The notes: generated by a model from the sequence alone, not told the origin. Counted from the stretch's first letter, positions 1,043 to 63,426 are shown. The stretch is DNA of 64,000 bases from IMGVR_UViG_3300035698_035366:62001-126000, one strand, 5' to 3'. Numbers and translations are program-made.

Positions 1043-4000
1043 ATGAGCTGGAAAAAACATTTGGCTGCCGTACCACAAGGGCAAAAACTCCAAGCTGCAA
1101 TTGATAGAATGCACGCTAATATGGATAATGAAGCCATTACTGGTACGAGTGGTAAATTTACTTCTTATCTACCAGAAGTTTATTCTGGGCAAGATAACCG
1201 TATTGAAAGATACGGTCAATATTTGAACATGGATAAAGATCCAGCCGTCAATGCTGCATTGGATACCATTTCATATTTCTGTACACAAACTGAAGAAGAA
1301 TCACCTTTGATGTTCAAAATTGATTACTTTGATAATGTCACTGATGCGGAAACAGAAGTGTTACAAGCTTCCCTTAGAAAATGGACATTAATCAATAAAT
1401 TCAAACAACGACTATTTGGTATTTTCAGAAAAACTATTATGTATGGTGATCAATTCTTTATTCGCGACCCAGAAACATTTGAACTGCATTGGGTCAATCA
1501 CGAAAATGTTGATAAGATAATTGTAGATGAGGCACAAGGAAAGAAACTTGATCAATTCATAGTTAGGGATTTGGATTTGAATCTGCAGACATTAGTAGCA
1601 ACTCAGCCTAGAAAAGGACGTGGTTCACAAGGACCAACAGGGTGGGCTGGAACGCCTAAGGCCGCTGGACCAGTCACTGTTCCATCATCAGCAGGTGGTT
1701 ATGGTACAAGGTTTGATACTGGTCAAGGTGAATATATTGATGCAAATCATGTTGTTCAATTCTCTCTTTCAGATGGACAAGACGCAAATTGGCCGTTTGG
1801 TTCTTCAATTTTGGAATCAGTTTTCAAACCATACAAGCAGAAAGAATTAATTGAAGATGCGGTTATCATTTATCGAGTTCAAAGAGCACCTGAACGTAGA
1901 GTATTTTATATTGATACTGGTAATGCACCCCCACATAAGGCTATGGAGTTCGTTAATCGAATTTCAAATGAAATACACCAACGACGTATACCAACACAGA
2001 CTGGTGGTGGATCAACAATTATGGATGCAGCATACAACCCATTGTGTTTAGCGTTAGACACAACTATACCGCTATTAGATGGTAGAACACTTAAATTGGA
2101 AGAATTGATTACTGAATATAACCAAGGTAAAGAAAATTGGACTTATAGTTGTGACCCTATAACAGGTAAGATTGTTCCTGGTAATATTACATGGGCAGGT
2201 ATCACACGCAAAAACACACAAGTGATTAAATTAAACCTGGATGATGGAACTTCAATTACATTAACACCAGACCACAAAGTACCGGTTTTAGGTAAAGGAT
2301 TCGTCGAAGCACAACACCTGACTAAAAATGATTCATTGATTAGTTATGAAACACGAGAAAAAAGCCTAGTTTCTTCGGATAATGATAGAACATACACTCA
2401 AATTTACGATCATGAACAAAATGAATGGGTTTATGTTCATCGGTTAGTTAATAAATTCTTTAGAGATATTAACAAACATCAAGAATTTACATATCTACCA
2501 GAAAATATTAATTCTCATAAAAGTGTTGTTCACCATAAAGATTTCAATCGATATAATAATGATCCTAGGAATCTACAATTAATGAATCACTTAGACCATA
2601 TTAGATACCATCAGGATACTAATTTTTGGCAGCATATTTCAGAGAAAGAAGCTGAACGAATTAAATTAAAAATAAGTAAGACCTTAAAAAATCGGTGGGA
2701 AAATATTACCGATGATGAAAAAAGAATTTCTTTAAAAAATATAAGAAAAGCGCAGCAACAAGCAGTTTGGTTAAGAAATAATGACAATGATCATGCAACA
2801 AAATATGCTGTTAATTTTGGAAAAGCAAGACGTGAAAAAATTAAAAACGATCCTGATTTCAAAAAACGAATTACTTCACATTTAACAAATTGGCAAGAAA
2901 ATATGCCTAATCAACGAAAGAATTACACTCAAAAGATGTTACAATTAGTAATTGATGTTGTTAGAGAAAATGATTCAAACCGTGTTAATACAGCTAAAAT
3001 ATTAAATGAAAATGGTGATATACTTAACGAAATTAAATTAGTAAATCCAGTAGATCCTAAAAAGAATAATAAAATTGGTTATACAACATTCACTCCTGAA
3101 AATCTCGACGGTATTATTTCTAATTTCGGATACAAAGGATGGAAAGACTTTAAATCTAAAATTAATGTTTATAATCATAGAATTACCTCAATTGAATGGT
3201 TAGATGAAAAACAAGATACTGGCACAATAACAATAGATGGTAAAGAAAAATGGCATAATTATCATACCTTCCCAGTAAATAATAGCATTTTTGTTAAAAA
3301 TTCAATGATTGACGATTATTTCTTTCCACAAACTGCAGAAGGTCGAGGATCAAAGGTTGAAACTCTTCCGGGTGGAGATAGTTTAGGTGAGATTGATGAT
3401 TTGAAATATTTCAATAATAGAATGCTCGATGGTTTGCGCGTTCCCCGTTCATATATTTCAACAGGACCAGATGAAAACCAAGGTGGGTTAAGTGACGGTA
3501 AGCTCGGAATGGCTTATATGCAAGACTTTAGTTTTGGCAAGTATTGTGGTAGAATTCAAGATCAGCTAAATCCAACATTTGACCGTGAATTCAAATTATT
3601 TCTAAAGGACCGCGGTATTCAAGTTGATTCAGGTATGTTCCAAATTGAACTTCATACGCCGCAGAATTTCTCAAAGTATCGCCAAATTGAGGCTGATTCA
3701 GCACAAATTTCAGTATTCCAACCACTAGCTGATGTTCCTTACTTGTCTAAGCGATTCCTAATGAAACGATTCCTAAATCTTTCAGATGAAGAAATTCTTG
3801 AAAATGAGGAATTGTGGAGAGAGGAAAATGAAGAATCTGCAAATGATGCAATGGGTATAAATACTGGTGGTGGAGGCGGAGGTGCCGCTGGCGTTTCAGG
3901 CCTGAGTGCTGTTGGTATTCGTCCAGATGAAGGTGGTGAAGATATTGATACCGGAGAAGAATTGGAAGGCACGGAATCGCCAATCTCTGGTGGTGAAGCT

Positions 4001-4045
4001 GGTGAAGTCGAAACAGGTGAAGAAGCCCCTGAAGTGGAGTTATAA
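1043..4045 (+). CDS. Portal protein (T4 gp20-like) interrupted by an intein
   Basis: gp20 motifs IEDAVIIYRVQRAPERRVFYIDTGN, SMIDDYFFP..EGRGSKVETLPGG..LGEIDDLKYF. Confidence 0.92.
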   Translation: MSWKKHLAAVPQGQKLQAAIDRMHANMDNEAITGTSGKFTSYLPEVYSGQDNRIERYGQYLNMDKDPAVNAALDTISYFCTQTEEESPLMFKIDYFDNVTDAETEVLQASLRKWTLINKFKQRLFGIFRKTIMYGDQFFIRDPETFELHWVNHENVDKIIVDEAQGKKLDQFIVRDLDLNLQTLVATQPRKGRGSQGPTGWAGTPKAAGPVTVPSSAGGYGTRFDTGQGEYIDANHVVQFSLSDGQDANWPFGSSILESVFKPYKQKELIEDAVIIYRVQRAPERRVFYIDTGNAPPHKAMEFVNRISNEIHQRRIPTQTGGGSTIMDAAYNPLCLALDTTIPLLDGRTLKLEELITEYNQGKENWTYSCDPITGKIVPGNITWAGITRKNTQVIKLNLDDGTSITLTPDHKVPVLGKGFVEAQHLTKNDSLISYETREKSLVSSDNDRTYTQIYDHEQNEWVYVHRLVNKFFRDINKHQEFTYLPENINSHKSVVHHKDFNRYNNDPRNLQLMNHLDHIRYHQDTNFWQHISEKEAERIKLKISKTLKNRWENITDDEKRISLKNIRKAQQQAVWLRNNDNDHATKYAVNFGKARREKIKNDPDFKKRITSHLTNWQENMPNQRKNYTQKMLQLVIDVVRENDSNRVNTAKILNENGDILNEIKLVNPVDPKKNNKIGYTTFTPENLDGIISNFGYKGWKDFKSKINVYNHRITSIEWLDEKQDTGTITIDGKEKWHNYHTFPVNNSIFVKNSMIDDYFFPQTAEGRGSKVETLPGGDSLGEIDDLKYFNNRMLDGLRVPRSYISTGPDENQGGLSDGKLGMAYMQDFSFGKYCGRIQDQLNPTFDREFKLFLKDRGIQVDSGMFQIELHTPQNFSKYRQIEADSAQISVFQPLADVPYLSKRFLMKRFLNLSDEEILENEELWREENEESANDAMGINTGGGGGGAAGVSGLSAVGIRPDEGGEDIDTGEELEGTESPISGGEAGEVETGEEAPEVEL
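2045..3301 (+). mobile_element. Intein (~419 aa) with HNH homing endonuclease
   Basis: Starts CLALDTTIPLLDG, block B LTPDHKV, ends ..HNYHTF..IFVKN followed by +1 Ser; internal VVHHKDFNRYNNDPRNL HNH motif; removal restores NPL|SMIDDYFFP. Confidence 0.88.
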
Positions 4046-25485: not shown

Positions 25486-27609
25486 TTAAGCGTCTGTTGC
25501 GATTATTTCATCAACAATGTTCTTTGGTACTTCTGTATATTTTTCAAGATGCATTGTAAATGTTGCGCGCCCTGAAGTCATACTCCGTAATGCAGTCATA
25601 TAGCCAAACATTTCCGAAAGTGGAACGTTTGCTTCTACAACAACTGCGCTACCACGTGCATCTTGTCCAAGAATTAATCCACGACGTCGACTAATATCAC
25701 CAATAACGTCTCCTAGGTAATCATTCGGAGTAACCACTTCAACCATCATCAATGGTTCAAGTAGAACTGGTCCGGCTTTTTTAGCAGCTTCTCGGAAGCA
25801 AGCCTTCGCCGCAATTTCGAACGCAAGAGCACTAGAATCAACATCATGATATTTTCCGTCGATTAGTGTCACTTTAAAGTCCAAAGTTGGATAACCAGCG
25901 ACAACACCGCTCTTGCCTTGTTCTCTAAAACCATCTTCAACGGCTGGGACGTATTCTCTTGGAACATTACCACCCGTAACAAGATTTTCGAACGAATAAC
26001 CAGCACCTGGTTCATTTGGACCAATTGTAACCTTAATTTCAGCAAACTGTCCTGAACCACCAGACTGCTTACGGTGAGTATAAGTATGCTCGACGTCCCT
26101 CGTTAATGTTTCACGATAAGCAACTTTTGGCTTACCGATGTTACATGCAACATCGTATTCACGCATCATGCGGTCGATAATAATGTCTAGGTGTAGTTCA
26201 CCCATACCACTAAGAATGGTTTGCCCGGACTCTTCATCGAGCTTTAGACGCAAGCTTGGATCTTCCTTGCCGAGCTTATTGAGTGCAATGCCCATCTTCT
26301 GCTGGTCAGCTTTGGTTTTTGGTTCAACCGCAATATCAATCACTGGTTCAGGAAAGATCATTCGTTCAAGCACGCATGGTTTATTAATATCACATAATGT
26401 ATCACCAGTCGTAGAGTCCTTTAGACCAACGAACGCAACAATGTCACCCGCCACCACACCGTCAATATTTTCACGACTATTGGCATGCATTTCAACGATG
26501 CGACCAAGACGTTCATTTTTTCCTCGTGTTGAATTTAGTACCGTAGTTCCGGAACTGGCTGTACCAGAATAAACACGGGCGAATGCGAGAGAACCGAATT
26601 TGTCTTCAATAATTTTGAAAACAAGCGCACTAAATGGCTCATTGTCTGAAGATTTTCGAACTCCACTAACTTCACCATCTTCATCGACTGTATTGATATT
26701 ATCAACATCGGTTGGTGCTGGCATATAATCAACGACTGCGTCAAGTAATGGCTGAACGCCTTTATTCTTGAAAGCAGAACCGCACAGGATTGGTACAAAT
26801 AACCCATTAACTGTACCCTTTCGGATGCACTTAATTAATGTATCAAAATCCAAATCACCATTTTCAAAATATGATTCCATAGCATCATCATCGGCGCCAG
26901 CAGCATCTTCGATTAGTTTTTCGCGAAGTTCTGTGATACGCTCAATAACGTCTTTATCTTCCGCAATCAAATCCATATCTGCAATTCGTTTGGAAAATTC
27001 ATCGCTGGTTACATCAACTTCATCCCATGTCGCTCCCAAATCTTCACCATGATAAAACAGTCCTTTCATAGTGACAAGGTTCACAATCCCTTCGAATTTT
27101 TCTTCAGAACCCATAGGAAGTTGTGTAATAAGCGGCGTAGCAGCAAGACGGCTTTCAATCATGTCAACACACCGCATGAAGCTGGCACCATCACGGTCCA
27201 TCTTGTTAATAAAACACATACGGGGAACGTTGTATTGATCAGCTAAACGCCAATTTGTTTCGGACTGTGGCTCAACCCCAGCAACACCGTCAAAAACAAC
27301 AACAGCACCATCAAGCACGCGAAGTGAACGATTTACCTCAATCGTGAAGTCAACGTGTCCTGGAGTATCGATAATATTGATTTGATGATCTCGCCAGAAG
27401 ACAGTAGTTGCAGCGGAGGTAATAGTAATACCACGCTCTTGCTCTTGTGCCATATAATCAGTGGTGGCGGCGCCATCATGTACTTCACCAATTTTATGGC
27501 CCTTTCCGGTGTAGTATAGAATACGTTCGGTTGTGGTGGTTTTACCTGCATCGACGTGGGCGATAATACCAATATTCCGGTACATATTCAAGGGTTTATT
27601 GCGAGCCAT
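25486..27609 (-). CDS. fusA: Elongation factor G, full length
   Basis: [64 protein letters not shown]. Confidence 0.97.
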
Positions 27610-29292: not shown

Positions 29293-30501
29293 ATGAGAAT
29301 TGCAATGTTTGAAGATCGAACAACCGCTCACGTGGATGCCAGTACAATCGTCACGCCTGATATGCTGACGATTCGAAGAGCATTTCAGGAAGCAGGGCAT
29401 GAACTCCGTATTGTTGGTGGAACAGTCCGTGATCTTCTTCTTGGGAAAGACCCCAAGGACATCGACTTCGCAACAACGGCCACACCTGAAGAAATGAAAG
29501 AAATCTTTGAGAACAATGGTTTCTCTTGGATCCCAACAGGTGAGCAGCACGGAACGTTGACAGTTCTTGGTACCAAAGACCGTGAACCGTTTGAGGTTAC
29601 AACCCTGCGTATTGACACCAATCAAGATGGTCGTCATGCTGATGTAGAGTTCACTCGCTCATGGGAAAAAGATGCATCCCGCCGTGATCTTACCTACAAT
29701 GCAATGAGCATGGATTTTGATGGAAACGTTTTTGATTACAACGGTGGTCTCGCTGATCTACAAAGCGAAACGACGCGATTTGTTGGTTCACCCGATGAGC
29801 GTGTTCGAGAAGATTTCCTGCGTATTCTCCGCTTTTTCCGTTTCCAATCTCGTTTTGCACACGATATTCCTGATGACGAGCTTTTGGCTATCAAAAATAA
29901 CGTTGACGGCCTCCGCAATATCAGTGGAGAGCGGATGTGGATGGAGATGAGTAAAATTCTTAGTGGAAACACCGAAAAGTTGGCGGCTATCATCGACACT
30001 ATGCAAAACCTCAACGTCCTGGACGCAATTGGCTTCGCTCGAAAGGTCAATGCAAATGACGTTGAGCTAGTTCGAAAGCTTACTGATAATCCAGTTACAG
30101 TCCTTGTGGCACTGGTAAAAACGCATGATGGTTTCAACCGCCTGGCGGATAAGTGGAAGATGAGTAGTGCTGAGCGCAACCTCGGTGAGTTTATCCTTGA
30201 TAATCTTTTTGAAAACATCGGTGTTCAAGAAGCTGAAGACATGCTCACTGACAAAGTTGATCCAGCATGGATCCAAGAACTGTTTGCAGCGAAGGGGAAG
30301 CCCAATCCCGTGGCTACTTTCACTCCAACAAAATTCCCAGTGACAGGTGGAGACCTAATCGCTCAGGGTCACAAACCGGGACCAGAAATGGGCAATACGC
30401 TCAAGTTTTTGAATCAGGAATGGAAGAAGAGTCGTTTTTCTCTTTCAAAGGACGAGTTGCTTCGTTTGAGCAAACCGGCGAGCAAAACCATTCAACGGTA
30501 A
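29293..30501 (+). CDS. cca: CCA-adding enzyme / tRNA nucleotidyltransferase
   Basis: VGGTVRDLLLGKDPKDIDFAT, EVTTLRID, DASRRDLTYNAM, EDFLRILRFFRF. Confidence 0.9.
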   Translation: MRIAMFEDRTTAHVDASTIVTPDMLTIRRAFQEAGHELRIVGGTVRDLLLGKDPKDIDFATTATPEEMKEIFENNGFSWIPTGEQHGTLTVLGTKDREPFEVTTLRIDTNQDGRHADVEFTRSWEKDASRRDLTYNAMSMDFDGNVFDYNGGLADLQSETTRFVGSPDERVREDFLRILRFFRFQSRFAHDIPDDELLAIKNNVDGLRNISGERMWMEMSKILSGNTEKLAAIIDTMQNLNVLDAIGFARKVNANDVELVRKLTDNPVTVLVALVKTHDGFNRLADKWKMSSAERNLGEFILDNLFENIGVQEAEDMLTDKVDPAWIQELFAAKGKPNPVATFTPTKFPVTGGDLIAQGHKPGPEMGNTLKFLNQEWKKSRFSLSKDELLRLSKPASKTIQR

Positions 30502-47569: not shown

Positions 47570-47740
47570 ACTATCGTCCTAATGATGGATTCACTTATAC
47601 AATATTTAGCATCTTTTAAAAAATACACAGTTTTTATACTCGTCTGCTAAATACCAACGTATAATTTATGTGTATGATTGCATGAATAAAACAATTTGAA
47701 TAATATGCAATTTGCAAGAAACATTAAGGAGAGATATATA

Positions 47741-50700
47741 ATGGCACTCGTATCACCAGGCGTAGAAGTCACAGCAACCGATGAAAGTTTCTTTGCCAAC
47801 CCAGGGCAAGGAACAATTCCTTTCATTATGATTGCTACCGCTGAAGACAAGCCAAATCCAGGTAATCCAGCTTTAAATGCACCTGGTACAACACAAGCAA
47901 ACGCTGATAAACTTTTTCTTATCACTAGTCAAAGAGAACTAATCCAAACATTTGGTGAACCAACTTTTGCTCAGGTTCAAGGTACTCCACAACATGGTAA
48001 TGAGACAAACGAATACGGTTTATGGGCCGCGTATAGTTACATGGGGATTTCAAATCGCGCCTATGTTATGCGTGCTGATCTAAACTTGGATCAGTTGCAG
48101 CCAGAAGTTAATGAACCACGTAGTCAAGCACTAAATGGAACGTATTGGTTAGACACCGGAACAACAAATTTTGGTATTTTCCGATCAATCGGTTCCGATG
48201 GCAATCCCGCTACTTCCGCGTTTAATGATTGGTCTGTAAAAACACCATTTGTTGTAGATACGACTGCTGAAGCAAGCACACAACGAGTTTCATCTTTCTT
48301 CGTACCAACAATTGGCGACGCACTAATTGCCGGCGCCGGAGACCTAGTAATTAATGGTGTTACAATACCATTAGCTGGTGGTGAGGACCTAAGCAATGTT
48401 GGACTTGATAATGGTTTGGTTCAGATCATTAACAATGCTGTTATTCCAGGAATTGAAGCTTCAGTTTGGTGGTTTGGTCGCGGTTTAAAGTTGGTAATTA
48501 CAAATACAACGTCGGGATCAATTGATCTAACCGGCTCTGATTCTTCTATCCTAATTGATCTTGGTCTCGGCTCATCAGAGATTGTTCCTGACCGTGCATT
48601 ATTTGACGGAGAAACATTCTTTGCGGTTGTTACAATTGATTTTGAAAACAGAGTTTATGAGTGGATCACCCCAGTTGATGGAAATGGTGTTACTTTGGGA
48701 CCTGCTCAATGGTACCTAGTTGGTACTGATGGTTGGAGAAATGCTGTTCCTTCACAAGTTGAGGGAGATGGCACAGTTGTTACCGCAGCATCAACAATTT
48801 CAGTAACTTTTAGTTTATCAGGAAATACAACTTCAACCCAAACAGTTGTTGCAAGCGCGGCAACCGTCCCAGCGATGGTTGCAGATTTAACAACAGCATT
48901 CGCAACTGAAGTTGCTGATCAACAAGTTGAGTTCGCAGTTGGTGGATCAGGAAGTTTAGTAATTACAAACAATGACGGTGGTTCAATTACGGTATCAGGA
49001 CCACTTGCTGGTTCAACTCAATTGGATATGCCATCCCTAAAAGCTAAAGAGCTATTTTATGCTCCACATACGAACATTCCAGATAATAGTATCGAGGGTG
49101 ATGTTTGGATTAAGACAACTGAGCCAAACAATGGTGCAGATTATCAAGTGGCAATTTTTGATGATTCAATTGGACAGTTCGTTACAGTTAATGCCCCATT
49201 ATTTGCAGATGATACTGCCGCTCTTGCGGCACTGGGACCAAACCCAGCACCAGGTATCCTTTACGTTGAATTTGATGTAACAGATGAAGGTGTTGCTACC
49301 CACGTACTAAAACGTTCTAATGGTGTATCATTTGACCCATTGGTTTATGTGGCACAGGTTGCTGAGCCAACAAATGCTCCTCTAGAAGGAACATTATGGT
49401 ACAACACAAACTTTGATGTTGATATTATGGTAAGCACTGGTACTTCTTGGGTAGGTCTTAACAACCACCCATTCTATGCTAATGCTGATATTATTCTAAA
49501 TGCATCAAAACCAACACAGAAGCCAGTTGGATCACCAAATGGTGTTGCTCTTGTAGAGAATGACATCTGGATTGACACAAGTAATTTGGAGGATTATCCA
49601 ATAATCCGCCGTTATCGTGCAGCATCACAGAGTTTTGAACTAGTAGATAATACAGATCAAACAACACCGTTTGGTATTGTGTTTGCTGATGCCCGTCAAG
49701 ACGATGGTCTTGGTAATGAGGATTCAACCAGTCTTGCAAATAGCGATTTCGTTGATCCAGATGCACCAAATCCATTAACATTCCCTAATGGTTTCCTACT
49801 GTGGAATACACGCTTTAGCACATTGAATGTTAAGGAATGGCAACCAGATGCTCTTCTAGAATTTACAGAGGCAGAGCTTCTTGGAGCAAATGTTGTTCCA
49901 GCACAGTATGAAGTTGGTCTATCCGTATTCCCACCAATCCTTGATGGTGATCAGGGACGTTGGGTGACAATCAGTGGTAACCAGAATGATGGCGCGCCAA
50001 ATATGGCGCGTAATGCACAGAGAGCAATGGTTGTACGTCGAATGGCTGCATCAATTGCTGGAAATGAAGAACTTCGTGCAGAAACAGTGTTCTTCAATCT
50101 TATCGCTACACCAGGTTACCCAGAATTGATTGATGAAATGGTAACATTGAATTTTGATAAGAAGGAAATTGCGTTTATTATTGGTGATACACCAGCTAGA
50201 CTTGCTCCTTCAGGAACATCGATTCAGTCTTGGGCAACGAATGCAGAAAATGCACCAAGTAATGGTGAACTTGCACTAACAACCCGCGATACTAACGTTG
50301 GTATCTATTACCCATGGGGTCTAGGAACCAATATTGACGGGTTTGAGGTTATGGTACCACCATCAGCAATTGCACTAAGAACAATCGCGTTCAGTGATAG
50401 TGTTTCTTATCCATGGTTTGCACCCGCTGGTTTCTCCAGAGGTCGTGTTTCTAACGTGTCAAGTGTTGGTTTCTTGAACGCTGAAGAAGAATACAATCCA
50501 GTTATTCTTAATCAGGGACAACGAGATGTTCTTCAGCTTAATGACATCAATCCAATTGCATTCATGCCTAATCAGGGATTGGTTGTATTTGGACAGAAAA
50601 CACTTCATCCAGTTGACTCTGCTCTAGACAGGGTTAATGTTGTTCGATTGGTGAACTTCTTACGTTATAACTTTGATATTATTGCAAAACCATTCTTGTT

Positions 50701-50944
50701 CGAACCAAACGATCAGATTACTCGCGATTCAGTAACGTCAACATTTGAACGTTTCTTGGGTGATTTGGTTGGTCTAAGAGCACTTTTGGAGTTTGCGGTA
50801 GTCTGTGATTCGAGCAATAATACTCCAGAACGCATTGACAGGAACGAGTTGTGGATTGATATTGCCATCAAACCTGTGAAAAGTATAGAGTTTATTTTCA
50901 TTCCTATCCGCGTTCTAAACACAGGCGACGATTTAACAGCATAA
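47741..50944 (+). CDS. Tail sheath protein (gp18-like) with large insertion
   Basis: MALVSPGVEV, NEYGL.AAYSY, YYPWG, PWFAPAG..RG, INPI, GQKT..SALDRVNVVRL, IKPVKSIEFI. Confidence 0.95.
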   Translation: MALVSPGVEVTATDESFFANPGQGTIPFIMIATAEDKPNPGNPALNAPGTTQANADKLFLITSQRELIQTFGEPTFAQVQGTPQHGNETNEYGLWAAYSYMGISNRAYVMRADLNLDQLQPEVNEPRSQALNGTYWLDTGTTNFGIFRSIGSDGNPATSAFNDWSVKTPFVVDTTAEASTQRVSSFFVPTIGDALIAGAGDLVINGVTIPLAGGEDLSNVGLDNGLVQIINNAVIPGIEASVWWFGRGLKLVITNTTSGSIDLTGSDSSILIDLGLGSSEIVPDRALFDGETFFAVVTIDFENRVYEWITPVDGNGVTLGPAQWYLVGTDGWRNAVPSQVEGDGTVVTAASTISVTFSLSGNTTSTQTVVASAATVPAMVADLTTAFATEVADQQVEFAVGGSGSLVITNNDGGSITVSGPLAGSTQLDMPSLKAKELFYAPHTNIPDNSIEGDVWIKTTEPNNGADYQVAIFDDSIGQFVTVNAPLFADDTAALAALGPNPAPGILYVEFDVTDEGVATHVLKRSNGVSFDPLVYVAQVAEPTNAPLEGTLWYNTNFDVDIMVSTGTSWVGLNNHPFYANADIILNASKPTQKPVGSPNGVALVENDIWIDTSNLEDYPIIRRYRAASQSFELVDNTDQTTPFGIVFADARQDDGLGNEDSTSLANSDFVDPDAPNPLTFPNGFLLWNTRFSTLNVKEWQPDALLEFTEAELLGANVVPAQYEVGLSVFPPILDGDQGRWVTISGNQNDGAPNMARNAQRAMVVRRMAASIAGNEELRAETVFFNLIATPGYPELIDEMVTLNFDKKEIAFIIGDTPARLAPSGTSIQSWATNAENAPSNGELALTTRDTNVGIYYPWGLGTNIDGFEVMVPPSAIALRTIAFSDSVSYPWFAPAGFSRGRVSNVSSVGFLNAEEEYNPVILNQGQRDVLQLNDINPIAFMPNQGLVVFGQKTLHPVDSALDRVNVVRLVNFLRYNFDIIAKPFLFEPNDQITRDSVTSTFERFLGDLVGLRALLEFAVVCDSSNNTPERIDRNELWIDIAIKPVKSIEFIFIPIRVLNTGDDLTA

Positions 50945-55958: not shown

Positions 55959-56114
55959 ATGTTTATTTTTACAATTGCTTGGAGCCAAACAGACCGAGAC
56001 GTTATCGCAGTTGAAGCAAAGACGCGAGACGAAGCTTATGAGAAGATGGTAAAAAGGATTGGAAATAGCTTTAACATCGTTGACACAAGGGAGGTTACAA
56101 AAATAATAGAATAA
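55959..56114 (+). CDS. 51-aa hypothetical
   Basis: RBS TAAGGAG; MFIFTIAWSQTDRDVIAVEAKTRDEAYEKM.. Confidence 0.6.
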   Translation: MFIFTIAWSQTDRDVIAVEAKTRDEAYEKMVKRIGNSFNIVDTREVTKIIE

Positions 56115-56147
56115 TAGAATAATAGAATAATAGAATAATAGAATAAT
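56102..56147 (+). repeat. Tandem 8-mer (AATAATAG) x5.75
   Basis: Direct reading. Confidence 0.95.
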
Positions 56148-56371
56148 TTTTAAAAAACGAACATTTTTTTATTGTTTTAGTACGAAAATTATAGTATATT
56201 ATAAATAACAATGAGGCAGGAGCGTAGGAGCAACAAAAACCTCACATAAATTAAATTATTTAGATCGAAGTCGTAGCTGGAGGTAACGTTACCAGTGAAA
56301 GCGGAAGGGCGGTATACCGCGTCCGATAAGATGAGCCTAAGTCGCAGAACGGAACTGGCACGGATACAGAT

Positions 56372-56438
56372 CGAAGAGCCGAATGCAAACGGTTATCATT
56401 TGGATTGAAACTGTCGTTTGTAAATAACTTGTTCTTCG
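56372..56438 (+). ncRNA. Y-RNA-like unit 1
   Basis: CGAAGAGC[C]GA..GGTTATC..TAACTTGTTCTTCG; 8-bp stem with bulged C. Confidence 0.65.
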
Positions 56439-56444
56439 TAGATC

Positions 56445-56511
56445 GATTGAGCCGAAGGGTAGTTGGTTATCTCTTATTGAAAGAACGTGTTGCAGCACAT
56501 TAACTTGCATC
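56445..56511 (+). ncRNA. Y-RNA-like unit 2
   Basis: GAGC[C]GAAGGGTAGTTGGTTATCTC..TAACTTGC; an alternative pairing with 56511-18 is possible. Confidence 0.6.
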
Positions 56512-57216
56512 CAACCCCAATCCTTGCTCATGATAATTGGTTTCCAATTTCCATAAAAAATTGGTGGTGGAGGCAGCATATAAGGATTAATCCTATTATG
56601 ATACCGCCCCAGGTTTCCAACTTCCTTAAAGAGTTGGTGGCGGATAAAAGTTTTAAGGTAGTGTAATTACCATATGACTCCTCCAAAAGCGGGAAAGAAA
56701 TTTCCCGCTGGATCGAGGCTCTAATAATAACAGGAGCAAGGCGCAGTAGAAAAACCACTCGGTATGTTTATGGGTAAGCTGCATAGACTATAAACGATTA
56801 TACAGATTTGATGCCTGATTCAGCTAAGAAGGCATCTCACGGTGGTGGTGCTGAAACCGCATGATCGTGGGGGTATTCGAGTAAAGCTCGGTACATTTTG
56901 TGGAGGAAGGCTGATTGTGGCACCGACGGAAATCTAGGGTCACCTGTTCTTCAAGGGAGGAGGCACCACAAAGATCGACCTAAATTAGTTTTACTTAGTT
57001 AAACTAAGTTGGGTTGACTTGTTTAGCGATGTATTTGTTGGCTGAAAGCCAATAAAGGTGATTATCCACTGGATAGGTAAGAGGTATACACCTTGGGGCT
57101 ATACATGGCGTTAAATGATGCGTGTAAGGGCGAGCACTGAGTTCAGAGTGCATAGGAAATAAACGGAAGTCGGGAAGCAGTAAGCCTTACGGTAGTCGCT
57201 TCCAAGTCCTAAGATC

Positions 57217-57280
57217 GAAGAGCCGAAGAAATATGGTTATCTTGCAATGATGAACCCCATATTTCATTAACTTGCTCTTT
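57217..57280 (+). ncRNA. Y-RNA-like unit 3
   Basis: GAAGAGC[C]GA..GGTTATC..TAACTTGCTCTTT. Confidence 0.65.
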
Positions 57281-57291
57281 TAATTTTGATC

Positions 57292-57362
57292 GGGGCCGTA
57301 GTATGTGGGTTATCTTACATTCAGAAAACAGTTTCTTGCAGTAAGACCGCTAACACTATCGC
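57292..57362 (+). ncRNA. Y-RNA-like unit 4 (divergent)
   Basis: GGGC[C]GTAGTATGTGGGTTATC; TCTTAC/GTAAGA stem. Confidence 0.5.
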
Positions 57363-57450
57363 AATTACTGATTAGTAATCAATTTATTGGTGAAAATCGG
57401 TTTTCGGATGTTTAATATGGATCACTTAGAATGATTTCAATTAAGTTAAA

Positions 57451-57488
57451 CTAGCCGAAGTCCATGTACACTATTTGCCCTTTGTTAG
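57451..57488 (+). ncRNA. Minimal Y-like bulged-C hairpin
   Basis: CTAGC[C]GAAG pairs with CTTTGTTAG. Confidence 0.4.
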
Positions 57489-58184
57489 CTGGAAGTCATG
57501 ATCCAGCGAAAGACGATAGATGCGGGAATATGGAAGCAAGAGCGTCTTTATTAGAAAGAACTGGCGATATCCAGGGACGTTTGATAGGGATTTTCAAATA
57601 GCCAAAATGGTTATCGAGGAGTCAAATTCCGGTCCGGAATATCTGGAAAGACGTTGATACGATAACTAATCAATTAGCCAGGGCCTACCCGGCGCTTGGT
57701 TTAGAGGGGTTGGTGTAGAACACCTTCCCCTCCTTAATTGAAGTTAATTGAAGATGAATACAGAAGAATAGAACAATTTTTGAAAAACTTGAAAAAAGTT
57801 GTTGCTATTCATAAAAAACAGTGTTAGTATAACGTCTCATATAGTAACTTACAGTAAGAGAGGAATACTAAATGGAAATTTTTAGTAGATAGATTTTATT
57901 TTTAGAGAACTTATTTTTTACTTAGAAAAGTATAGTATGATAGTCGGCCGCGCACCTTGAAATAACCGGCATTTCCTTATTATCCGAAAATGCGTGACAG
58001 GATTTTAAGGGTAGAAAACAAAAATGTTTTTTACTTATGATAGATAAATTTTAATGGGCTTGTATTCTATTAGATAGAAGTTACAAACTCTATAATAGTA
58101 GAACATTAAGGGTAACGGTAGTGGCCACTACCGTTACTCTAGATCGGAGCATAAATTGGAGCATTTAAACAGGAGGGCATAACC

Positions 58185-59819
58185 ATGTCTAGCTTTAACA
58201 GTCTACGTAACACTAATAATTCGCGCCAGAACGCGGCAACCCCACAGTCACAGCCAATTCCAGGCCGTGAAGAGGAGATGGTCGAGAACAACGCAGGTGG
58301 TTTCACCTTCACCGTCGATCTATGGGACCGTCTTGACCGTTTCCTAATCCTTGGAGTTGAGGGTGGAACATACTACGTTTCAGAAAAGAAGCTCGCAGTT
58401 GACAACGCCAAAAACGTTGTTAAGGCAATTGAGCAGGACGGCCTACGGGTTGTTCAGAGAATTGTTGAAATTAGCGACTCTGGCCGAGCAGCAAAGAACG
58501 ATCCAGCATTGTTTGCTCTAGCACTAGCAGCTAGTGCAGATAATCCGCAGACTCGTCAGGCAGCACTTGTGGCTTTGCCACAGGTAGCTCGTATCGGTAC
58601 ACATCTTTTCCACTTTGCGGATTTCGTACAGAATTTCCGTGGTTGGGGCCGCGCACTTCGCCGGGCAATTGGTGATTGGTATACGAAGCAGGATGTCAGT
58701 AATCTAGCCTATCAGGCAGTTAAGTACCGCCAGCGTGATGGTTGGACCCACCGCGACTTACTCCGTTTGAGTCACCCAAAGACTCGCAACGAATCACGTA
58801 ACGATGTTTTCAAGTGGATTGTAACGGGTAAGAACGTTTCCGATGTTCCAGTTATCGCTGGATTTGAACAGGCACAAACGGCAACTTCACCAAAAGAAAT
58901 TGTACGCTTGATTAACGAATTCAATCTTCCACGTGAGGCAATTCCAACAGAGTTCCTTAACGACGTTAATGTATGGGATGCGCTTCTCCAGAAGATGCCT
59001 TTGCACGCAATGATTCGAAACCTTGGTAAGATGAGCAGCATTGGTCTACTTGCACCAATGAGTAATGCCCAGAACCTGGTTGTTAATAAGCTTTCTAACG
59101 CGGAGGATCTCCGTAGAAGCCGTGTACATCCAATGGCTGTTTTGACAGCTTTGTACACGTACAAGAGTGGTCACGGTATCCGTGGTAGCCTTTCTTGGGA
59201 CGTTAACTCTCAGGTGATGGATGCATTGGACGAATCGTTCTATGGAACTTTCCAGAACGTTGAGCCAACTGGTAAGCCAACTATGCTCGCTCTTGATGTT
59301 TCAGGAAGCATGTCAATGGACAACATTGGTGGCGTCCCAGGACTCACACCGCGTGTTGCTAGTGCTGCGATGGCTATGATTACGGCCCGCACTGAGCCAA
59401 ACTATATGGTTACTGCTTTTACCGGTGGTGGAAGCTGGGGACGTAGTGGTAATGTTGATAATTTGACAGTTCTTGATATCACTCCCCGCCAGCGTATGGA
59501 CGATGTAATTCGGAAGGTAAGTGGCCTTTCATTTGGTGGGACGGATTGTGCATTACCAATGATTTATGCCGATAAGAAGAATTTGGCTATTGACAACTTT
59601 GCGGTTTATACTGATAACGAAACATGGGCGGGTTCGATTCAGCCATCCCAGTCTTTGGTAAATTACCGTAAGAAGAGTGGTCGTGGAGCTCGTCTCGCAG
59701 TGGTGGGAATGACGTCAACGGATTTCACTATCGCTGATCCAAAGGATGCTGGTATGATGGACGTGGTTGGATTCGATTCAGCGGCTCCAGCAATTATGGC
59801 CAACTTCTTTCGAGGTTAA
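58185..59819 (+). CDS. rsr: Ro60 RNA-binding protein (TROVE + vWA)
   Basis: NNAGGF, RLDRFLILG.EGGTYY, AVKYRQRDGWTHRDLLRLSHP, MIRNLGKM, LALDVSGSM, GGTDCALP, TDNETW. Confidence 0.96.
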   Translation: MSSFNSLRNTNNSRQNAATPQSQPIPGREEEMVENNAGGFTFTVDLWDRLDRFLILGVEGGTYYVSEKKLAVDNAKNVVKAIEQDGLRVVQRIVEISDSGRAAKNDPALFALALAASADNPQTRQAALVALPQVARIGTHLFHFADFVQNFRGWGRALRRAIGDWYTKQDVSNLAYQAVKYRQRDGWTHRDLLRLSHPKTRNESRNDVFKWIVTGKNVSDVPVIAGFEQAQTATSPKEIVRLINEFNLPREAIPTEFLNDVNVWDALLQKMPLHAMIRNLGKMSSIGLLAPMSNAQNLVVNKLSNAEDLRRSRVHPMAVLTALYTYKSGHGIRGSLSWDVNSQVMDALDESFYGTFQNVEPTGKPTMLALDVSGSMSMDNIGGVPGLTPRVASAAMAMITARTEPNYMVTAFTGGGSWGRSGNVDNLTVLDITPRQRMDDVIRKVSGLSFGGTDCALPMIYADKKNLAIDNFAVYTDNETWAGSIQPSQSLVNYRKKSGRGARLAVVGMTSTDFTIADPKDAGMMDVVGFDSAAPAIMANFFRG

Positions 59820-59828
59820 CTAAATACG

Positions 59829-59853
59829 GGGGATGGCTTGGCCATCCCCTTTA
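59829..59853 (+). terminator. Terminator after Ro60
   Basis: GGGGATGGC-TTG-GCCATCCCC-TTTA. Confidence 0.75.
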
Positions 59854-61302: not shown

Positions 61303-61890
61303 ATGGTGGAAACGTTAAATAAATTCGGAGTTCCGGTAGACGGTGAAAGAGCTGGTATGCTTATGCCAAAGCTCACAAACCGCTTTCGCGTTCGTCTAAC
61401 AAATTTCGGCCCGCTTAATTCGGCACAATCAGTAGATCTATCACGTCAGGTTATATCGGTTGCAAAGCCAAACTTAACACATGAAGAAGTTATGGTTCAT
61501 AGTTATAACTCAATTGCTTACTTTGCTGGTAAACATGCATGGCAAACTGTTGATCTAGTAGCACGTGATGACATCACAAACGCTGTAACGCGCCTTGTGT
61601 ATCATCAGGTACAGAAACAGATGAACCACTTTGAACAGACTAGCCCAATTGCTGGTTCTAACTACAAATTCGGTATGGTTGTTGAAACACTAGACGGTGG
61701 AAACGATGGTGTGTTGGAAAAATGGGAACTGGAAGGTTGCTTCCTAACTAATATTGCTACGGAAGGTCTAAATTATGAATCTGCAAATGCGCAGACCATT
61801 ACGATGACAATTCGTTACGATAACGCAACACTACAGGATGGTCTACAGACACAGACACCAGAGCTTCTAACAGGATTGACGAGAGTTTAA
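61303..61890 (+). CDS. Tail tube protein (gp19-like)
   Basis: PKL.NRFRV, AGKH.WQ, WELEGCF, ITMTIRYDNA; GCTAAATA at 61244. Confidence 0.88.
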   Translation: MVETLNKFGVPVDGERAGMLMPKLTNRFRVRLTNFGPLNSAQSVDLSRQVISVAKPNLTHEEVMVHSYNSIAYFAGKHAWQTVDLVARDDITNAVTRLVYHQVQKQMNHFEQTSPIAGSNYKFGMVVETLDGGNDGVLEKWELEGCFLTNIATEGLNYESANAQTITMTIRYDNATLQDGLQTQTPELLTGLTRV

Positions 61891-61911
61891 TTTAATCCTG
61901 GAGGAATTCTA

Positions 61912-63426
61912 ATGCCTTTAGTTAATGATTTACTGTCTTTTGCTTTTAGTGGACAAAATCCGTTTGAAGATAGGATGCTACGTGATAGTAGACATGCACG
62001 TCACCGCTTTGAAACAAGAGATGCACAAACAGAACAAGATTTTGGTGGACGACCAAAACCAAAATTCCTGTTTGGTGTGCGATTCATAACTCAGTTCAAT
62101 TCACCGGCCTTTGGACAATTTTCTGACCAAAATGGCGACGTCGCTTTTATGGTTAAAACTGTTGATAAACCAAAAATTGATTTTGACGTCACAGTTATGA
62201 ATCAATATAATAAGCGTAGATTAGTTCAAACAAAAATAAAATATCAACCAATTAATATGCGTTTTTATGATTCAGTAGATGAAAGACTATCAAAATTTAT
62301 ATTATCATACATGCAGCATTACTATGGTGATCATTTAGCAGAAAATGTTGATCAATGGAGTTATGATAAAATTTCTTCAGAATTCAATAATGGTGTAGAT
62401 GGTTGGGGTTACAGAGGTATTTCCCAACCAGGCCGCTCAAATTCTGCCCCTTTCATGTCACATATTGAACTTTATCAATTCTTTGGTGGTAATTTTTCTC
62501 GTTGGGTTTTTGTTAACCCATTGATTACTAGCTTTGATCATGATAATGTTGATGCAGAATCGGGCAATGTTGCACAAGAAGCAAGTATGTCAGTCGAATT
62601 TGAAGGACTTCTTTATAGAGAAAAAAATATCCCATTAGCAACATCTAAAGTTGGTCGCGCAGCAATTGATTTCTTCAAGCTAGAAGAGTTCGCTGATAAT
62701 TTAGAATTACCTGATGCACTACAAATCGGCGGTTTAAATCTCGGTGGTATTAGTGATCTTGCATCGGCTAGATCAGTTTTTGGTCGAGAACTTGGTAGGA
62801 AAACAATCGAAGTTTTGAGCGGTAGCCCAATCGATACATCAGGCATTTCTAGAACATCATCATCGGCATTAACACCGTTTGGTAACTTTGATTTTGGTTC
62901 AGTTATTGTTGGTGAAGGTGTTGATGGATTAATTAGTAGCGGTGTAAGTGGATCGACAGGTGCGGTTTCAAACGCCATTAGAGCTGGTACTGCAAACGTT
63001 GCACGTGATGCTCTTAACTTGGTTAGAGGTAATATTCTTGGAACAGGTGGTACTCGACTCAATGACGGCGCTGCCTCGTTTTGTGCTGACCCAGCAACAG
63101 GATCTGGGACTTCACCGTCCGCATCCCCGGCAGGTGCCGCCAAAGCTGTTGGTCAAACAGGTGGGTTTTCCACACCAGGAGTAGCAGCAGATGAAAATTC
63201 AGCAGTTGTACAGTTTGCAGGAGCGGTGACAACTGGTGTTGATACAGTGGTCAAAGGGGTTGGTGATGGTTTACAGTTTGGATTAGAGACCATCGGGCTT
63301 AGAAATTCCCAATCTACTACAGGAAACCAAATTGGAGTAACAGCTAAACCATTTGTTGACCCAGATTCATTAACGCCTTCACAACGGGCTATTCGGGCAC
63401 AAAACCAATTTCCGGATAACACCTGA
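61912..63426 (+). CDS. Baseplate tail-tube cap/initiator (gp48/gp54-like)
   Basis: VKTVDKPKI, NQYNKRRLVQTKIKYQPI.MRFYDS; follows tube gene. Confidence 0.6.
   Translation: MPLVNDLLSFAFSGQNPFEDRMLRDSRHARHRFETRDAQTEQDFGGRPKPKFLFGVRFITQFNSPAFGQFSDQNGDVAFMVKTVDKPKIDFDVTVMNQYNKRRLVQTKIKYQPINMRFYDSVDERLSKFILSYMQHYYGDHLAENVDQWSYDKISSEFNNGVDGWGYRGISQPGRSNSAPFMSHIELYQFFGGNFSRWVFVNPLITSFDHDNVDAESGNVAQEASMSVEFEGLLYREKNIPLATSKVGRAAIDFFKLEEFADNLELPDALQIGGLNLGGISDLASARSVFGRELGRKTIEVLSGSPIDTSGISRTSSSALTPFGNFDFGSVIVGEGVDGLISSGVSGSTGAVSNAIRAGTANVARDALNLVRGNILGTGGTRLNDGAASFCADPATGSGTSPSASPAGAAKAVGQTGGFSTPGVAADENSAVVQFAGAVTTGVDTVVKGVGDGLQFGLETIGLRNSQSTTGNQIGVTAKPFVDPDSLTPSQRAIRAQNQFPDNT

What the first reader, a model, noticed from the sequence alone, without database searches (positions are those of the whole stretch)
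56368..57488. Multi-copy Y-RNA-like array upstream of phage Ro60, resembling animal Y RNAs
Four to five units share GC[C]GA-N7-9-GGTTATC and a 3' TAACTTG(C/T). The bulged-C helix shows compensatory changes (GAAGAGC/GTTCTTC, GAAGAGC/GCTCTTT, CTAGC/GTTAG). From memory, human Y1 starts GGCUGGUCCGAAGGUAGUGAGUUAUCUC and ends ..CACUUGAC..; unit 2 reads GAGCCGAAGGGTAGTTGGTTATCTC..AACTTGC. The units are ~65-70 nt with variable loops and no evident tRNA-like YrlA domain, in two tandem pairs (72 and 75 nt apart). Inference: one Ro60 loaded with several adaptor RNAs that tether different partners or act as decoys.
Basis: partly seen in the sequence, partly recalled or inferred. Interest (0 to 1): 0.88.

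Follow-up and report, generated by a model that had tools for sequence, protein, structure and literature searches.

The report
Phage Y RNA genes beside Ro60
A jumbo phage carries four small RNA genes just upstream of its Ro60 gene that have the same stem, bulged-C and UUAUC layout as animal Y RNAs; they are real and well conserved, but they are new members of an already published class (bacterial and phage Y RNAs).

Summary
The array is real. Four Y-RNA-like genes, not five, lie on the + strand of a 2-kb ORF-free island upstream of a phage Ro60 gene (58185-59819): Y1 56370-56439, Y2 56443-56534, Y3 57214-57282, Y4 57293-57480. Unit 2 closes at 56522-56530, not at its internal TAACTTGC. A covariance model built from relatives finds 135 copies in 61 of 88 viral loci searched, most chosen for a Ro60 gene. 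Every copy checked lies on the Ro60 strand, 44 loci have 2-8 copies, 92.9% of cells are paired, and compensatory change is abundant. The module is an 8-bp stem, bulged C, GA, A, a 9-bp stem ending GGG, UUAUC, then AACUUG on the 3' strand. It matches, element for element, Rfam's nematode stem-bulge RNA consensus and the human Y4 5' fragment. One relative reaches that family's threshold; the window's units do not. The island has no tRNA-like (YrlA) domain. Multiple co-transcribed Y RNAs beside bacterial and phage Ro60 are published (Chen 2014; phage phiLo 2025), so this is a new member of a known kind. Ro60 binding and adaptor roles are untested.

The parts
56200..56207 (+). TATAAATA, a T4-type late-promoter-like box just upstream of the non-coding island
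   Evidence: 8 of the 11 window occurrences lie just upstream of ORFs in the matching orientation. Use as a promoter is inferred.
56370..56439 (+). Y1, short Y RNA (70 nt). Lower stem CGAAGAGC/GUUCUUCG, bulged C at 56380, GA/UU, 9-bp upper stem 56384-56392 with 56414-56422, loop starting UUAUC
   Evidence: R1 70.2 bits and R2 62.0 bits. The MFE fold closes with the same lower stem.
56443..56534 (+). Y2, extended Y RNA (92 nt). UGAGC-C-GA pairs with UU-GCUCA (56524-56530). Upper stem GGGuAGUUGG with CCAAC-CCC. The loop holds a spare copy of the 3' motif (AUUAACUUGC, 56498-56507)
   Evidence: R2 34.5 bits, E 1.7e-7. The MFE fold gives the same closure.
56536..56651 (+). wcaG RNA motif, lying in the same island between Y2 and the next segment
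   Evidence: Rfam RF01761, 56.2 bits against a gathering score of 42.
57214..57282 (+). Y3, short Y RNA (69 nt). Lower stem GAAGAGC/GCUCUUU, bulged C, 9-bp upper stem GAAAUAUGG/CCAUAUUUC, loop starting UUAUC
   Evidence: R1 72.9 bits and R2 64.8 bits. MFE fold.
57293..57480 (+). Y4, long Y RNA (188 nt). GGGC-C-GU-A, upper stem GUAUGUGGG (57301-57309) with UCCAUGUAC (57461-57469), UUAUC, an insert of about 125 nt, and 3' ACUAUUUGCCC. The 5' motif reads GCCGUAG rather than GCCGAAG
   Evidence: R2 30.3 bits, E 1.9e-6. The MFE and centroid folds keep the long-range closure. No T-arm-like hairpin in the insert.
56263..58146 (+). Nine GAUCG boundary motifs (56263, 56369, 56441, 56711, 56863, 56973, 57213, 57288, 58142). 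One sits at the 5' edge of each Y unit, of the other segments and of the Ro60 leader
   Evidence: 9 on the + strand and 0 on the - strand in 2 kb, against 0.5 per kb outside; Poisson P about 1e-6. A role as a processing signal is inferred.
58185..59819 (+). Ro60 (TROVE plus vWA) gene, 544 aa
   Evidence: Pfam PF05731 2e-46 and PF25045 2e-57. PDB matches: D. radiodurans Rsr 8e-129, X. laevis Ro60 8e-126, human RO60 1e-123.
59828..59850 (+). Terminator-like hairpin that ends the Ro60 transcription unit
   Evidence: 10-bp stem with 7 G-C pairs, followed by a T-rich tail.

Best explanation
The island encodes four phage Y RNAs, small non-coding RNAs whose paired 5' and 3' ends form the Ro60-binding helix.

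Shown: the module is conserved and covaries, and its copies sit next to Ro60 genes on the Ro60 strand. The module is a lower stem with one bulged C, a GA/UU step, one unpaired A, a 9-bp GC-clamped upper stem, UUAUC at the 5' edge of a variable loop, and AACUUG on the 3' strand.

Inferred: a late promoter at about 56200 drives one long transcript through the island into Ro60. This transcript is cut at or near the GAUCG motifs into at least eight small RNAs. The phage Ro60 binds the bulged-C helix of Y1-Y4. The four different loops and inserts then gate the Ro60 cavity or tether it to other proteins. The most likely partner is the host exoribonuclease PNPase, as in Deinococcus, Salmonella and Thermus phage phiLo. 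This would redirect structured-RNA decay or surveillance late in infection.
For: - Motif count in the window is 4 against 0.02 expected.
- The seed alignment is 88% paired, 13 of 19 pairs change on both sides, and 0 of 500 shuffles reach this.
- Model R1 finds 135 matches in 61 of 88 viral loci searched, most of them chosen for a Ro60 gene. Every match checked is on the Ro60 strand, and most lie within about 1 kb of the gene.
- On those 135, 92.9% of cells are paired against 34-47% for slid controls, 759 cells change on both sides, the bulged C and the following G are invariant, and UUAUC is nearly so.
- The same model hits unannotated intergenic DNA upstream of Ro60 in cultured Gordonia, Mycobacterium and Streptomyces phages and beside Ro60 in four bacterial MAGs.
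- The 5' motif fits the published GNCGAAN0-1G Ro-binding motif.
- The window's Ro60 is full length and close to solved Ro60 and Rsr structures. K180, R184 and H197 align with X. laevis K170, R174 and H187 and are invariant in 20 relatives.
- Published precedent exists: M. smegmatis YrlA and YrlB are cut from one precursor upstream of rsr, and phage phiLo Ro60 binds two upstream Yrl RNAs and forms ternary complexes with host PNPase.
- GAUCG is enriched on one strand only at the unit boundaries.
Against: - There is no expression, processing or binding data for this phage.
- The window's units do not reach any Rfam Y_RNA, YrlA or sbRNA score, even at E<=10.
- Thermodynamic z-scores of Y2 and Y4 are unremarkable.
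- Y4 departs from the CGAA motif (CGUA).
- Alignment A4 was fitted to the model, which inflates the pairing percentage somewhat.
- No PNPase or other candidate partner gene was identified in the window, so the tethered partner is a guess by analogy.
Confidence: 0.8

Rival explanations
1. The units are cis-acting leader elements of the Ro60 mRNA, for example autoregulatory Ro60-binding sites or attenuators, and not stable trans-acting RNAs.
For: They lie upstream of Ro60 on the same strand, and no intrinsic terminator was found between them and the gene. A protein binding a mimic of its ligand in its own leader is a common regulatory theme (general knowledge).
Against: In other loci the units lie downstream of Ro60 (L060, L067, L069, L092), up to 1.7 kb upstream (L068, 3.5 kb if the L100 hit downstream of the gene is counted), or interleaved with tRNA genes. 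Here the nearest unit ends 705 nt before the start codon. Published homologues accumulate as discrete Ro60-bound RNAs.
Confidence: 0.05
2. The units are Y RNA or stem-bulge RNA relatives whose main job does not involve Ro60. The conserved upper stem and UUAUC could serve another process, as in DNA replication initiation by nematode sbRNAs and vertebrate Y RNAs. Alternatively they could act as decoys that soak up a host RNA-binding defence or nuclease.
For: In the literature UUAUC and the upper stem are needed for replication activity, not for Ro60 binding. Most C. elegans sbRNAs were not found in ROP-1 immunoprecipitates. The UUAUC and GGG/CCC clamp are more conserved here than Ro60 contact with the lower stem alone would explain.
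Against: The strict genomic linkage is to Ro60, not to replication genes. Here the island sits in the late structural module between tail sheath and tail tube. No phage or bacterial replication role for such RNAs is known.
Confidence: 0.1
3. The units are DNA-level repeats (iterons, recombination or packaging sites, or a REP/MITE-like element) and have no RNA function.
For: They are repeated in tandem pairs and share a 16-nt identical leader (AGATCGAAGAGCCGAA).
Against: Pairing is kept through G-U pairs, which exist only on one strand, and through hundreds of double changes with little primary-sequence conservation in the stems. The units always share the Ro60 strand. GAUCG is enriched on one strand only.
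Confidence: 0.02

Closest known systems
Bacterial and phage Y RNAs of the YrlA/YrlB type (Chen et al. 2014, RNA 20:1715; Rfam RF02553 YrlA)
   Same: They are encoded within 2 kb of Ro60 on the same strand, share the GNCGAAN0-1G motif near the 5' end, occur at two or more per species, and are cut from one precursor in M. smegmatis. Model R2 built here also hits the Ro60-upstream regions of mycobacteriophage Dandelion, Gordonia phage BearBQ and Streptomyces phage Karp. The long forms there overlap sub-threshold RF02553 matches.
   Different: [quoted passage not shown] This island has none: no RF02553 or tRNA hit, no ARAGORN hit and no T-arm-like hairpin. The paper says only the 5' strand of the Ro-binding helix is recognisable in the Salmonella and M. 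smegmatis RNAs. Here both strands are conserved, including UUG and AACUUG. Y1 and Y3 resemble the hairpin-type YrlB/Yrn2 class more than YrlA.
Thermus phage phiLo Yrl1 and Yrl2 with phiRo60 (NAR 2025, gkaf470)
   Same: A phage Ro60 with two Y-like RNAs carrying CGAA motifs in the upstream non-coding region. Binding was shown in vitro, and the RNAs form ternary complexes with host PNPase.
   Different: phiLo Ro60 is only a distant relative of this protein (E 3e-4, against 1e-123 to 1e-129 for Deinococcus, Xenopus and human Ro60). This island has four units, two of them with extended loops, embedded among other RNAs. I did not compare the phiLo RNA sequences directly.
Nematode stem-bulge RNAs (Rfam RF01656 ceN72-3_ceN74-2) and vertebrate Y RNAs (for example human Y4)
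   Same: The layout is the same element for element: lower stem, single bulged C, 2 bp, 1 unpaired base, a 9-bp upper stem ending GGG, UUAUC at the start of the loop, CCC..., and AACUUG on the 3' strand (RF01656 consensus; R2 consensus). The human Y4 5' fragment GGCUGGUC-C-GA-U-GGUAGUGGG-UUAUC has the same lengths. Relative L075 3187-3260 scores 38.1 bits against a gathering score of 38 for RF01656.
   Different: Those are eukaryotic Pol III genes. The window's own units do not reach RF01656 or RF00019 even at E<=10. The Kowalski and Krude review states that bacterial Y RNAs are not homologous with the vertebrate clades. Shared descent and shared constraint from binding a conserved Ro60 cannot be separated here.
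D. radiodurans Yrn1 and Yrn2
   Same: Several Y RNAs lie upstream of rsr, both strands of the metazoan-like helix are retained, and Yrn2 is a long hairpin without a tRNA-like domain. Y RNA tethers Rsr to PNPase.
   Different: Chen 2014 reports that Yrn1 finds no orthologues by BLAST.

Membership tests
Y RNA (Ro60-associated ncRNA, functional class) | Encoded close to a Ro60/Rsr gene on the same strand (the criterion used for bacterial and phage Y RNAs) | tested here: met
   The four units lie 705-1815 nt upstream of Ro60 on the + strand. The same arrangement holds in 61 of 88 related loci.
Y RNA (Ro60-associated ncRNA, functional class) | 5' and 3' ends pair into a long stem that holds a helix with a single bulged C | tested here: met
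   Covariation: 17 of 19 pairs change on both sides, 92.9% of cells are paired, and the bulged C is present in 135 of 135. All four window units align to it.
Y RNA (Ro60-associated ncRNA, functional class) | 5'-strand Ro-binding motif (GGUCCGA in vertebrates; GNCGAAN0-1G in bacteria, Chen 2014) | tested here: met
   Y1 GCCGAAUG, Y2 GCCGAAGG and Y3 GCCGAAG fit. Y4 reads GCCGUAG, one departure.
Y RNA (Ro60-associated ncRNA, functional class) | Bound and stabilised by Ro60 in vivo | not testable with these tools
   Needs RIP or EMSA. Indirect support only: the residues aligned with X. laevis K170, R174 and H187 are conserved. Their roles in RNA binding are from my own knowledge, not checked in a paper.
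Vertebrate Y_RNA (Rfam RF00019) | Score at or above the family threshold | tested here: not met
   No RF00019 match at gathering score or at E<=10 on the island or on sub-windows.
YrlA (Rfam RF02553) | tRNA-like domain (T arm, D arm, acceptor-like stem) inserted in the Y RNA loop | tested here: not met
   No RF02553 or tRNA match, 0 ARAGORN genes, and no T-arm-like hairpin anywhere in 56200-58185. In other loci, 11 of 16 long forms have one. Positive control: RF02553 gives sub-threshold hits in known actinophage loci.
YrlB/Yrn2-type hairpin Y RNA | Long hairpin with the Ro motif, a small loop and no tRNA-like module | tested here: inconclusive
   Y1 and Y3 have this shape. No model or sequence of YrlB or Yrn2 was available for comparison, and published YrlB orthologues are confined to S. 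enterica.
Nematode stem-bulge RNA (Rfam RF01656) | Stem, bulged C, upper stem, UUAUC at the 5' end of the loop, AACUUG 3' strand | tested here: met
   Element-by-element agreement of the RF01656 and R2 consensus lines. UUAUC is present in all four window units.
Nematode stem-bulge RNA (Rfam RF01656) | Score at or above the family threshold | tested here: not met
   No match for the window's units at E<=10. Relatives do match: L075 at 38.1 bits (gathering score 38) and 28.3 bits, L104 at 28.6 bits.
wcaG RNA (Rfam RF01761), for the neighbouring element | Score at or above the gathering threshold | tested here: met
   56.2 bits against 42 at 56536-56651, full-length match.

The most novel reading that the evidence does not exclude
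The short Y RNAs linked to phage and bacterial Ro60 genes may be true homologues of nematode stem-bulge RNAs and vertebrate Y RNAs, sharing one ancient module that either travelled with Ro60 or was exchanged with it. On this reading the GC-clamped 9-bp upper stem and the UUAUC loop edge, so far tied to metazoan DNA replication, are features of the Ro60 particle itself. That would contradict the published view that bacterial Y RNAs are not homologous with animal ones. A second layer: this phage builds a processed 2-kb operon of small RNAs (four Y RNAs, a wcaG RNA, a structured 240-nt RNA), punctuated by its own GAUCG cleavage signal and with no tRNA-like Y RNA at all.
Probability: 0.35. Interest if true: 0.75.

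Novelty: new member of a known kind. Interest (0 to 1): 0.55.

Why it matters
Ro60 and its Y RNAs are studied mainly as a human autoantigen particle, and what the RNAs do is still debated. This locus and the 135 relatives recovered give a large natural variation set, with conserved stems and free loops, for a Ro60 whose PDB matches to Xenopus and human Ro60 (E 8e-126 and 1e-123) score almost as high as its match to Deinococcus Rsr (8e-129).

The set shows that UUAUC and the GGG/CCC clamp are conserved where eukaryotic replication cannot be the reason. That makes the question 'what reads UUAUC?' directly testable with a phage or bacterial Ro60.

The work also shows that cultured, annotated phages (Dandelion, BearBQ, Karp) carry unannotated arrays of 2-6 such RNAs. 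Some phages, this one included, appear to do without the tRNA-like Y RNA that was thought to be universal in bacteria.

Tried and rejected
- Rfam at gathering score on the whole window found only wcaG. Rfam at E<=10 on the island and on two sub-windows gave no Y_RNA, YrlA or sbRNA hit for the window's own units.
- ARAGORN found no tRNA or tmRNA in the window.
- blastn of the island against 50,697 phage records found no match.
- RNAalifold on a plain MAFFT alignment proposed GGUUA/UAACU pairing. I rejected this: those columns are invariant and so uninformative, and MAFFT had misaligned the covarying upper stem. A register-true 7-sequence seed fixed the alignment.
- I looked for a close relative of the island to test Y2, Y4 and GAUCG. 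The 92%-identical Ro60 contig (L101) starts only 74 nt upstream of the gene, and the 63% relative has no DNA on hand. blastn and nhmmer of the non-Y segments against all fetched loci found nothing except that short leader.
- A genome-wide pattern scan returned 79 loci, of which only 4 have Ro60 nearby and score with the model. The rest are chance matches.
- The CTAGC/GTTAG 'fifth unit' was rejected as a separate unit.
- S0 (56263-56368), which has a GUCGUAG resembling Y4's motif, gave no model hit and no fold signal.
- I could not confirm from a held paper that K170/R174 are the Y RNA-binding residues. Two Wolin-lab reviews were not held either.
- One constraint fold used coordinates off by one and was redone.

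Full report
**Observation.** The window comes from a 296-kb viral contig (IMGVR_UViG_3300035698_035366). No ORF of 60 aa or more on the + strand lies between 56114 and 58185. A 544-aa gene with Pfam TROVE and vWA_Ro60 domains follows at 58185-59819. Shuffles give 0.02 expected. The core observation therefore stands. Several details needed correction, as described below.

**Is it a family?** An exact scan of IMG/VR for GCCGAA-N-GGTTATC-N-TAACTTG returned 19 loci. About eleven of them carry a Ro60 gene within the few kb fetched. Their stems differ in sequence but stay complementary.

A register-true seed of seven units gave these numbers:

| Measure | Value |
|---|---|
| Cells paired | 88% |
| Pairs with changes on both sides | 13 of 19 |
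| Shuffles reaching the observed value | 0 of 500 |
| Cells paired in slid controls | 39-50% |

The covariance model R1 built from this seed was run over 88 viral loci, 80 of which were chosen only because they encode a Ro60 relative. It found 135 matches at E<0.1 in 61 loci. Every match checked lies on the Ro60 strand, mostly within 1 kb upstream and sometimes just downstream. Copy numbers per locus were 1 (17 loci), 2 (27), 3 (10), 4 (4), 5 (2) and 8 (1).

On these 135 matches:
- The bulged C and the G after it are invariant.
- UUAUC is nearly invariant.
- 92.9% of cells are paired, against 34-47% in slid controls.
- 759 cells show changes on both sides.

That alignment was fitted to the model, which flatters the percentage, but the amount of double change is far beyond what fitting can create.

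A second model, R2, built from the 135 matches also finds:
- single long units in most of the loci that R1 had missed;
- 2, 3 and 6 units in unannotated DNA upstream of Ro60 in Gordonia phage BearBQ, Mycobacterium phage Dandelion and Streptomyces phage Karp;
- arrays of 2-6 units beside Ro60 in four bacterial MAGs, while the other 75 exact-pattern hits in bacterial genomes are chance.

**Anatomy in the window**.

| Unit | Coordinates | Length | R2 score | Key features |
|---|---|---|---|---|
| Y1 | 56370-56439 | 70 nt | 62.0 bits | Canonical short unit |
| Y2 | 56443-56534 | 92 nt | 34.5 bits | Extended loop with a spare 3' motif |
| Y3 | 57214-57282 | 69 nt | 64.8 bits | Canonical short unit |
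| Y4 | 57293-57480 | 188 nt | 30.3 bits | About 125-nt insert in the loop |

Y1 and Y3 have the canonical layout: an 8-bp lower stem, a bulged C, GA paired with UU, one unpaired A, a 9-bp upper stem, a loop of about 20 nt beginning UUAUC, and the 3' strand A-UAAC-UUG.

Y2's upper stem is GGGuAGUUGG with CCAAC-CCC, and its lower stem is UGAGC-C-GA with UU-GCUCA. The MFE fold gives the same closure.

Y4 runs GGGC-C-GU-A-GUAUGUGGG-UUAUC, then the insert, then UCCAUGUAC-ACUAUUUGCCC. The CTAGC/GTTAG hairpin scores only 6.5 bits, and its conformer is about 5 kcal/mol less stable than the long-range form.

The array is therefore two tandem pairs, each a short unit followed by a longer one.

**tRNA-like domain.** In other loci, 11 of 16 long units carry a T-arm-like hairpin, and some overlap weak Rfam YrlA matches. 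None of the window's units does, and neither does any other part of the island.

**Context.** The Ro60 gene sits in the late structural module of a T4-like jumbo myovirus:
- portal protein with an intein;
- major head protein;
- gp15;
- tail sheath at 47696-50944;
- tail tube at 61303-63426.

Sinorhizobium phage Phosso has the same sheath-Ro60-tube order.

A TATAAATA box at 56200 precedes the island. Most other copies of this box in the window lie just upstream of ORFs in the right orientation. No intrinsic terminator separates the island from Ro60, and one follows the gene at 59828-59850.

GAUCG occurs nine times on the + strand of the island and never on the - strand (P about 1e-6). It sits at the 5' edge of every Y unit, of the other segments and of the Ro60 leader, often a few bases after a hairpin. 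This points to an RNA-level signal, most simply a processing site in one long precursor. The signal is specific to this phage. Other phages use different short spacers or interleave the units with tRNA genes.

The island also holds a full-length wcaG RNA (56536-56651). A 240-nt segment (56973-57214) folds much better than shuffles (z = -3.3).

**The protein.** The window's Ro60 aligns end to end with D. radiodurans Rsr (8e-129), X. laevis Ro60 (8e-126) and human RO60 (1e-123). It aligns only weakly with the Thermus phage phiLo protein (3e-4). K180, R184 and H197 align with X. laevis K170, R174 and H187 and are invariant among 20 relatives. From my own knowledge these are the residues used in Y-RNA-binding and cavity mutants. 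I could not confirm this in a held paper.

**Comparison with what is known.**
- Chen et al. 2014 reported YrlA-type Y RNAs near Ro60 in 254 bacteria and 22 phages. They also reported the GNCGAAN0-1G motif, at least two Y RNAs in each species examined, hairpin-type partners (YrlB, Yrn2), and co-processing of YrlA and YrlB from one precursor.
- A 2025 paper showed that Thermus phage phiLo Ro60 binds two upstream Yrl RNAs and assembles with host PNPase.
- Jumbo phages with TROVE proteins have been catalogued.

The kind is therefore known, and this locus is a new member.

Three points go beyond those papers as far as I could read them.
1. Both strands of the metazoan-type helix are retained. Chen et al. 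say only the 5' strand is recognisable in the Salmonella and M. smegmatis RNAs.
2. The module matches, element for element, the Rfam consensus of nematode stem-bulge RNAs. One relative reaches that family's gathering score, and two more units score 28 bits. It also matches the human Y4 5' fragment printed in PMC6096425. The shared features include the GGG clamp and the UUAUC that the Krude laboratory linked to DNA replication. A full-text search found no paper connecting UUAUC with bacterial or phage Y RNAs.
3. This island has no tRNA-like Y RNA, although at least one per species was proposed as the rule.

The window's own units fail every Rfam threshold. I therefore file them by architecture and linkage, not by a curated model.

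**Mechanism and rivals.** The best-supported reading is that the units are Ro60-bound Y RNAs made from a processed late transcript, with variable loops that gate or tether Ro60. PNPase is the default partner by analogy. Conservation, covariation and linkage are shown. Transcription, processing, binding and the partner are inferred.

The rivals fare as follows.
- A cis-regulatory leader fits poorly with units that lie downstream of Ro60 or among tRNAs elsewhere.
- A DNA repeat is excluded by G-U-tolerant covariation on one strand only.
- A role independent of Ro60, or a decoy role, cannot be excluded. It is the interesting minority view, because UUAUC and the upper stem are more conserved than contact with the lower stem alone would explain.

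**Verdict.** It is a new member of a known kind, and the family-level resemblance to animal Y and stem-bulge RNAs deserves a proper test.

Noticed in passing
window 56263-58146 (+): GAUCG occurs 9 times on the + strand and 0 times on the - strand of the 2-kb island (P about 1e-6). It sits at the 5' edge of every Y unit, of the other segments and of the Ro60 leader, often just after a hairpin (for example 56686-56709 and 58112-58137). It is probably a phage-specific RNA processing signal. It is not shared by Y arrays in other phages.
   Followed up: partly
window 56536-56651 (+): A full-length wcaG RNA motif (RF01761, 56.2 bits) lies between Y2 and the next segment of the same non-coding island. 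It therefore looks like one of a set of processed small RNAs rather than a leader of a sugar or photosynthesis gene. Rfam classes the family as cis-regulatory.
   Followed up: no
window 56973-57214 (+): An unknown 240-nt segment bounded by two GAUCG motifs folds far better than shuffles (-74.3 kcal/mol, z = -3.3, 0 of 200), and its centroid fold is almost identical to its MFE fold. It has no Rfam match and no relative in the fetched loci.
   Followed up: partly
window 56498-56507 and 57451-57459 (+): Y2's loop contains a spare copy of the 3' consensus (AUUAACUUGC). Y4's loop ends with a spare copy of the 5' consensus (CUAGCCGAA), which can pair with UUGUUAG just past the unit. These could be relics of unit fusion or elements of alternative folds.
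   Followed up: partly
window 56200-56207 (+) and ten other sites: TATAAATA, the T4 late-promoter consensus, occurs 11 times. Eight copies lie just upstream of ORFs in the matching orientation (for example 19377-, 27655-, 35736-, 41646+), which suggests T4-like late transcription in this phage.
   Followed up: partly
window 25486-27609 (-) and 29293-30501 (+): The phage encodes a full-length EF-G homologue (all five Pfam domains) and a CCA-adding/poly(A) polymerase family enzyme, yet the 64-kb window has no tRNA gene.
   Followed up: no
window 1043-4045 (+): The T4-type portal protein (gp20) gene is 1000 aa long and contains a weak intein splicing domain match (31.6 bits, below the curated cut-off of 35.8) at residues 342-740.
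   Followed up: no
window 56102-56147: A perfect tandem repeat (AATAATAG x 5.8) lies at the 3' end of a small ORF, immediately before the island's promoter-like region.
   Followed up: no
L102 2561-2909; L104 2682-2902; L105 771-1379 and 2105-2329: The cultured phages Dandelion, BearBQ and Karp carry 3, 2 and 6 Y-like units in DNA left unannotated in their GenBank records. In Karp the units are interleaved with tRNA genes.
   Followed up: partly
L020 7235-7580; L002 991-1261; L011 8693-8909: In several metagenomic phages Y units abut tRNA genes with no spacer: a tRNA 3' end runs directly into a unit, or a unit is directly followed by a tRNA. This implies release by RNase P or RNase Z. The present phage has no tRNAs in the window and uses GAUCG instead.
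   Followed up: no
L026, L028-L030, L032, L033, L035: Several of the closest Ro60 relatives in IMG/VR (55-60% identity) carry a single long unit of 149-167 nt, 0.6-2.2 kb upstream, rather than an array of short ones.
   Followed up: no
L101 1-74: The only close relative found (Ro60 92% identical, Logan SRR27977663) has a contig that breaks 74 nt upstream of Ro60, at the edge of the island. The break may be caused by the repeats.
   Followed up: no
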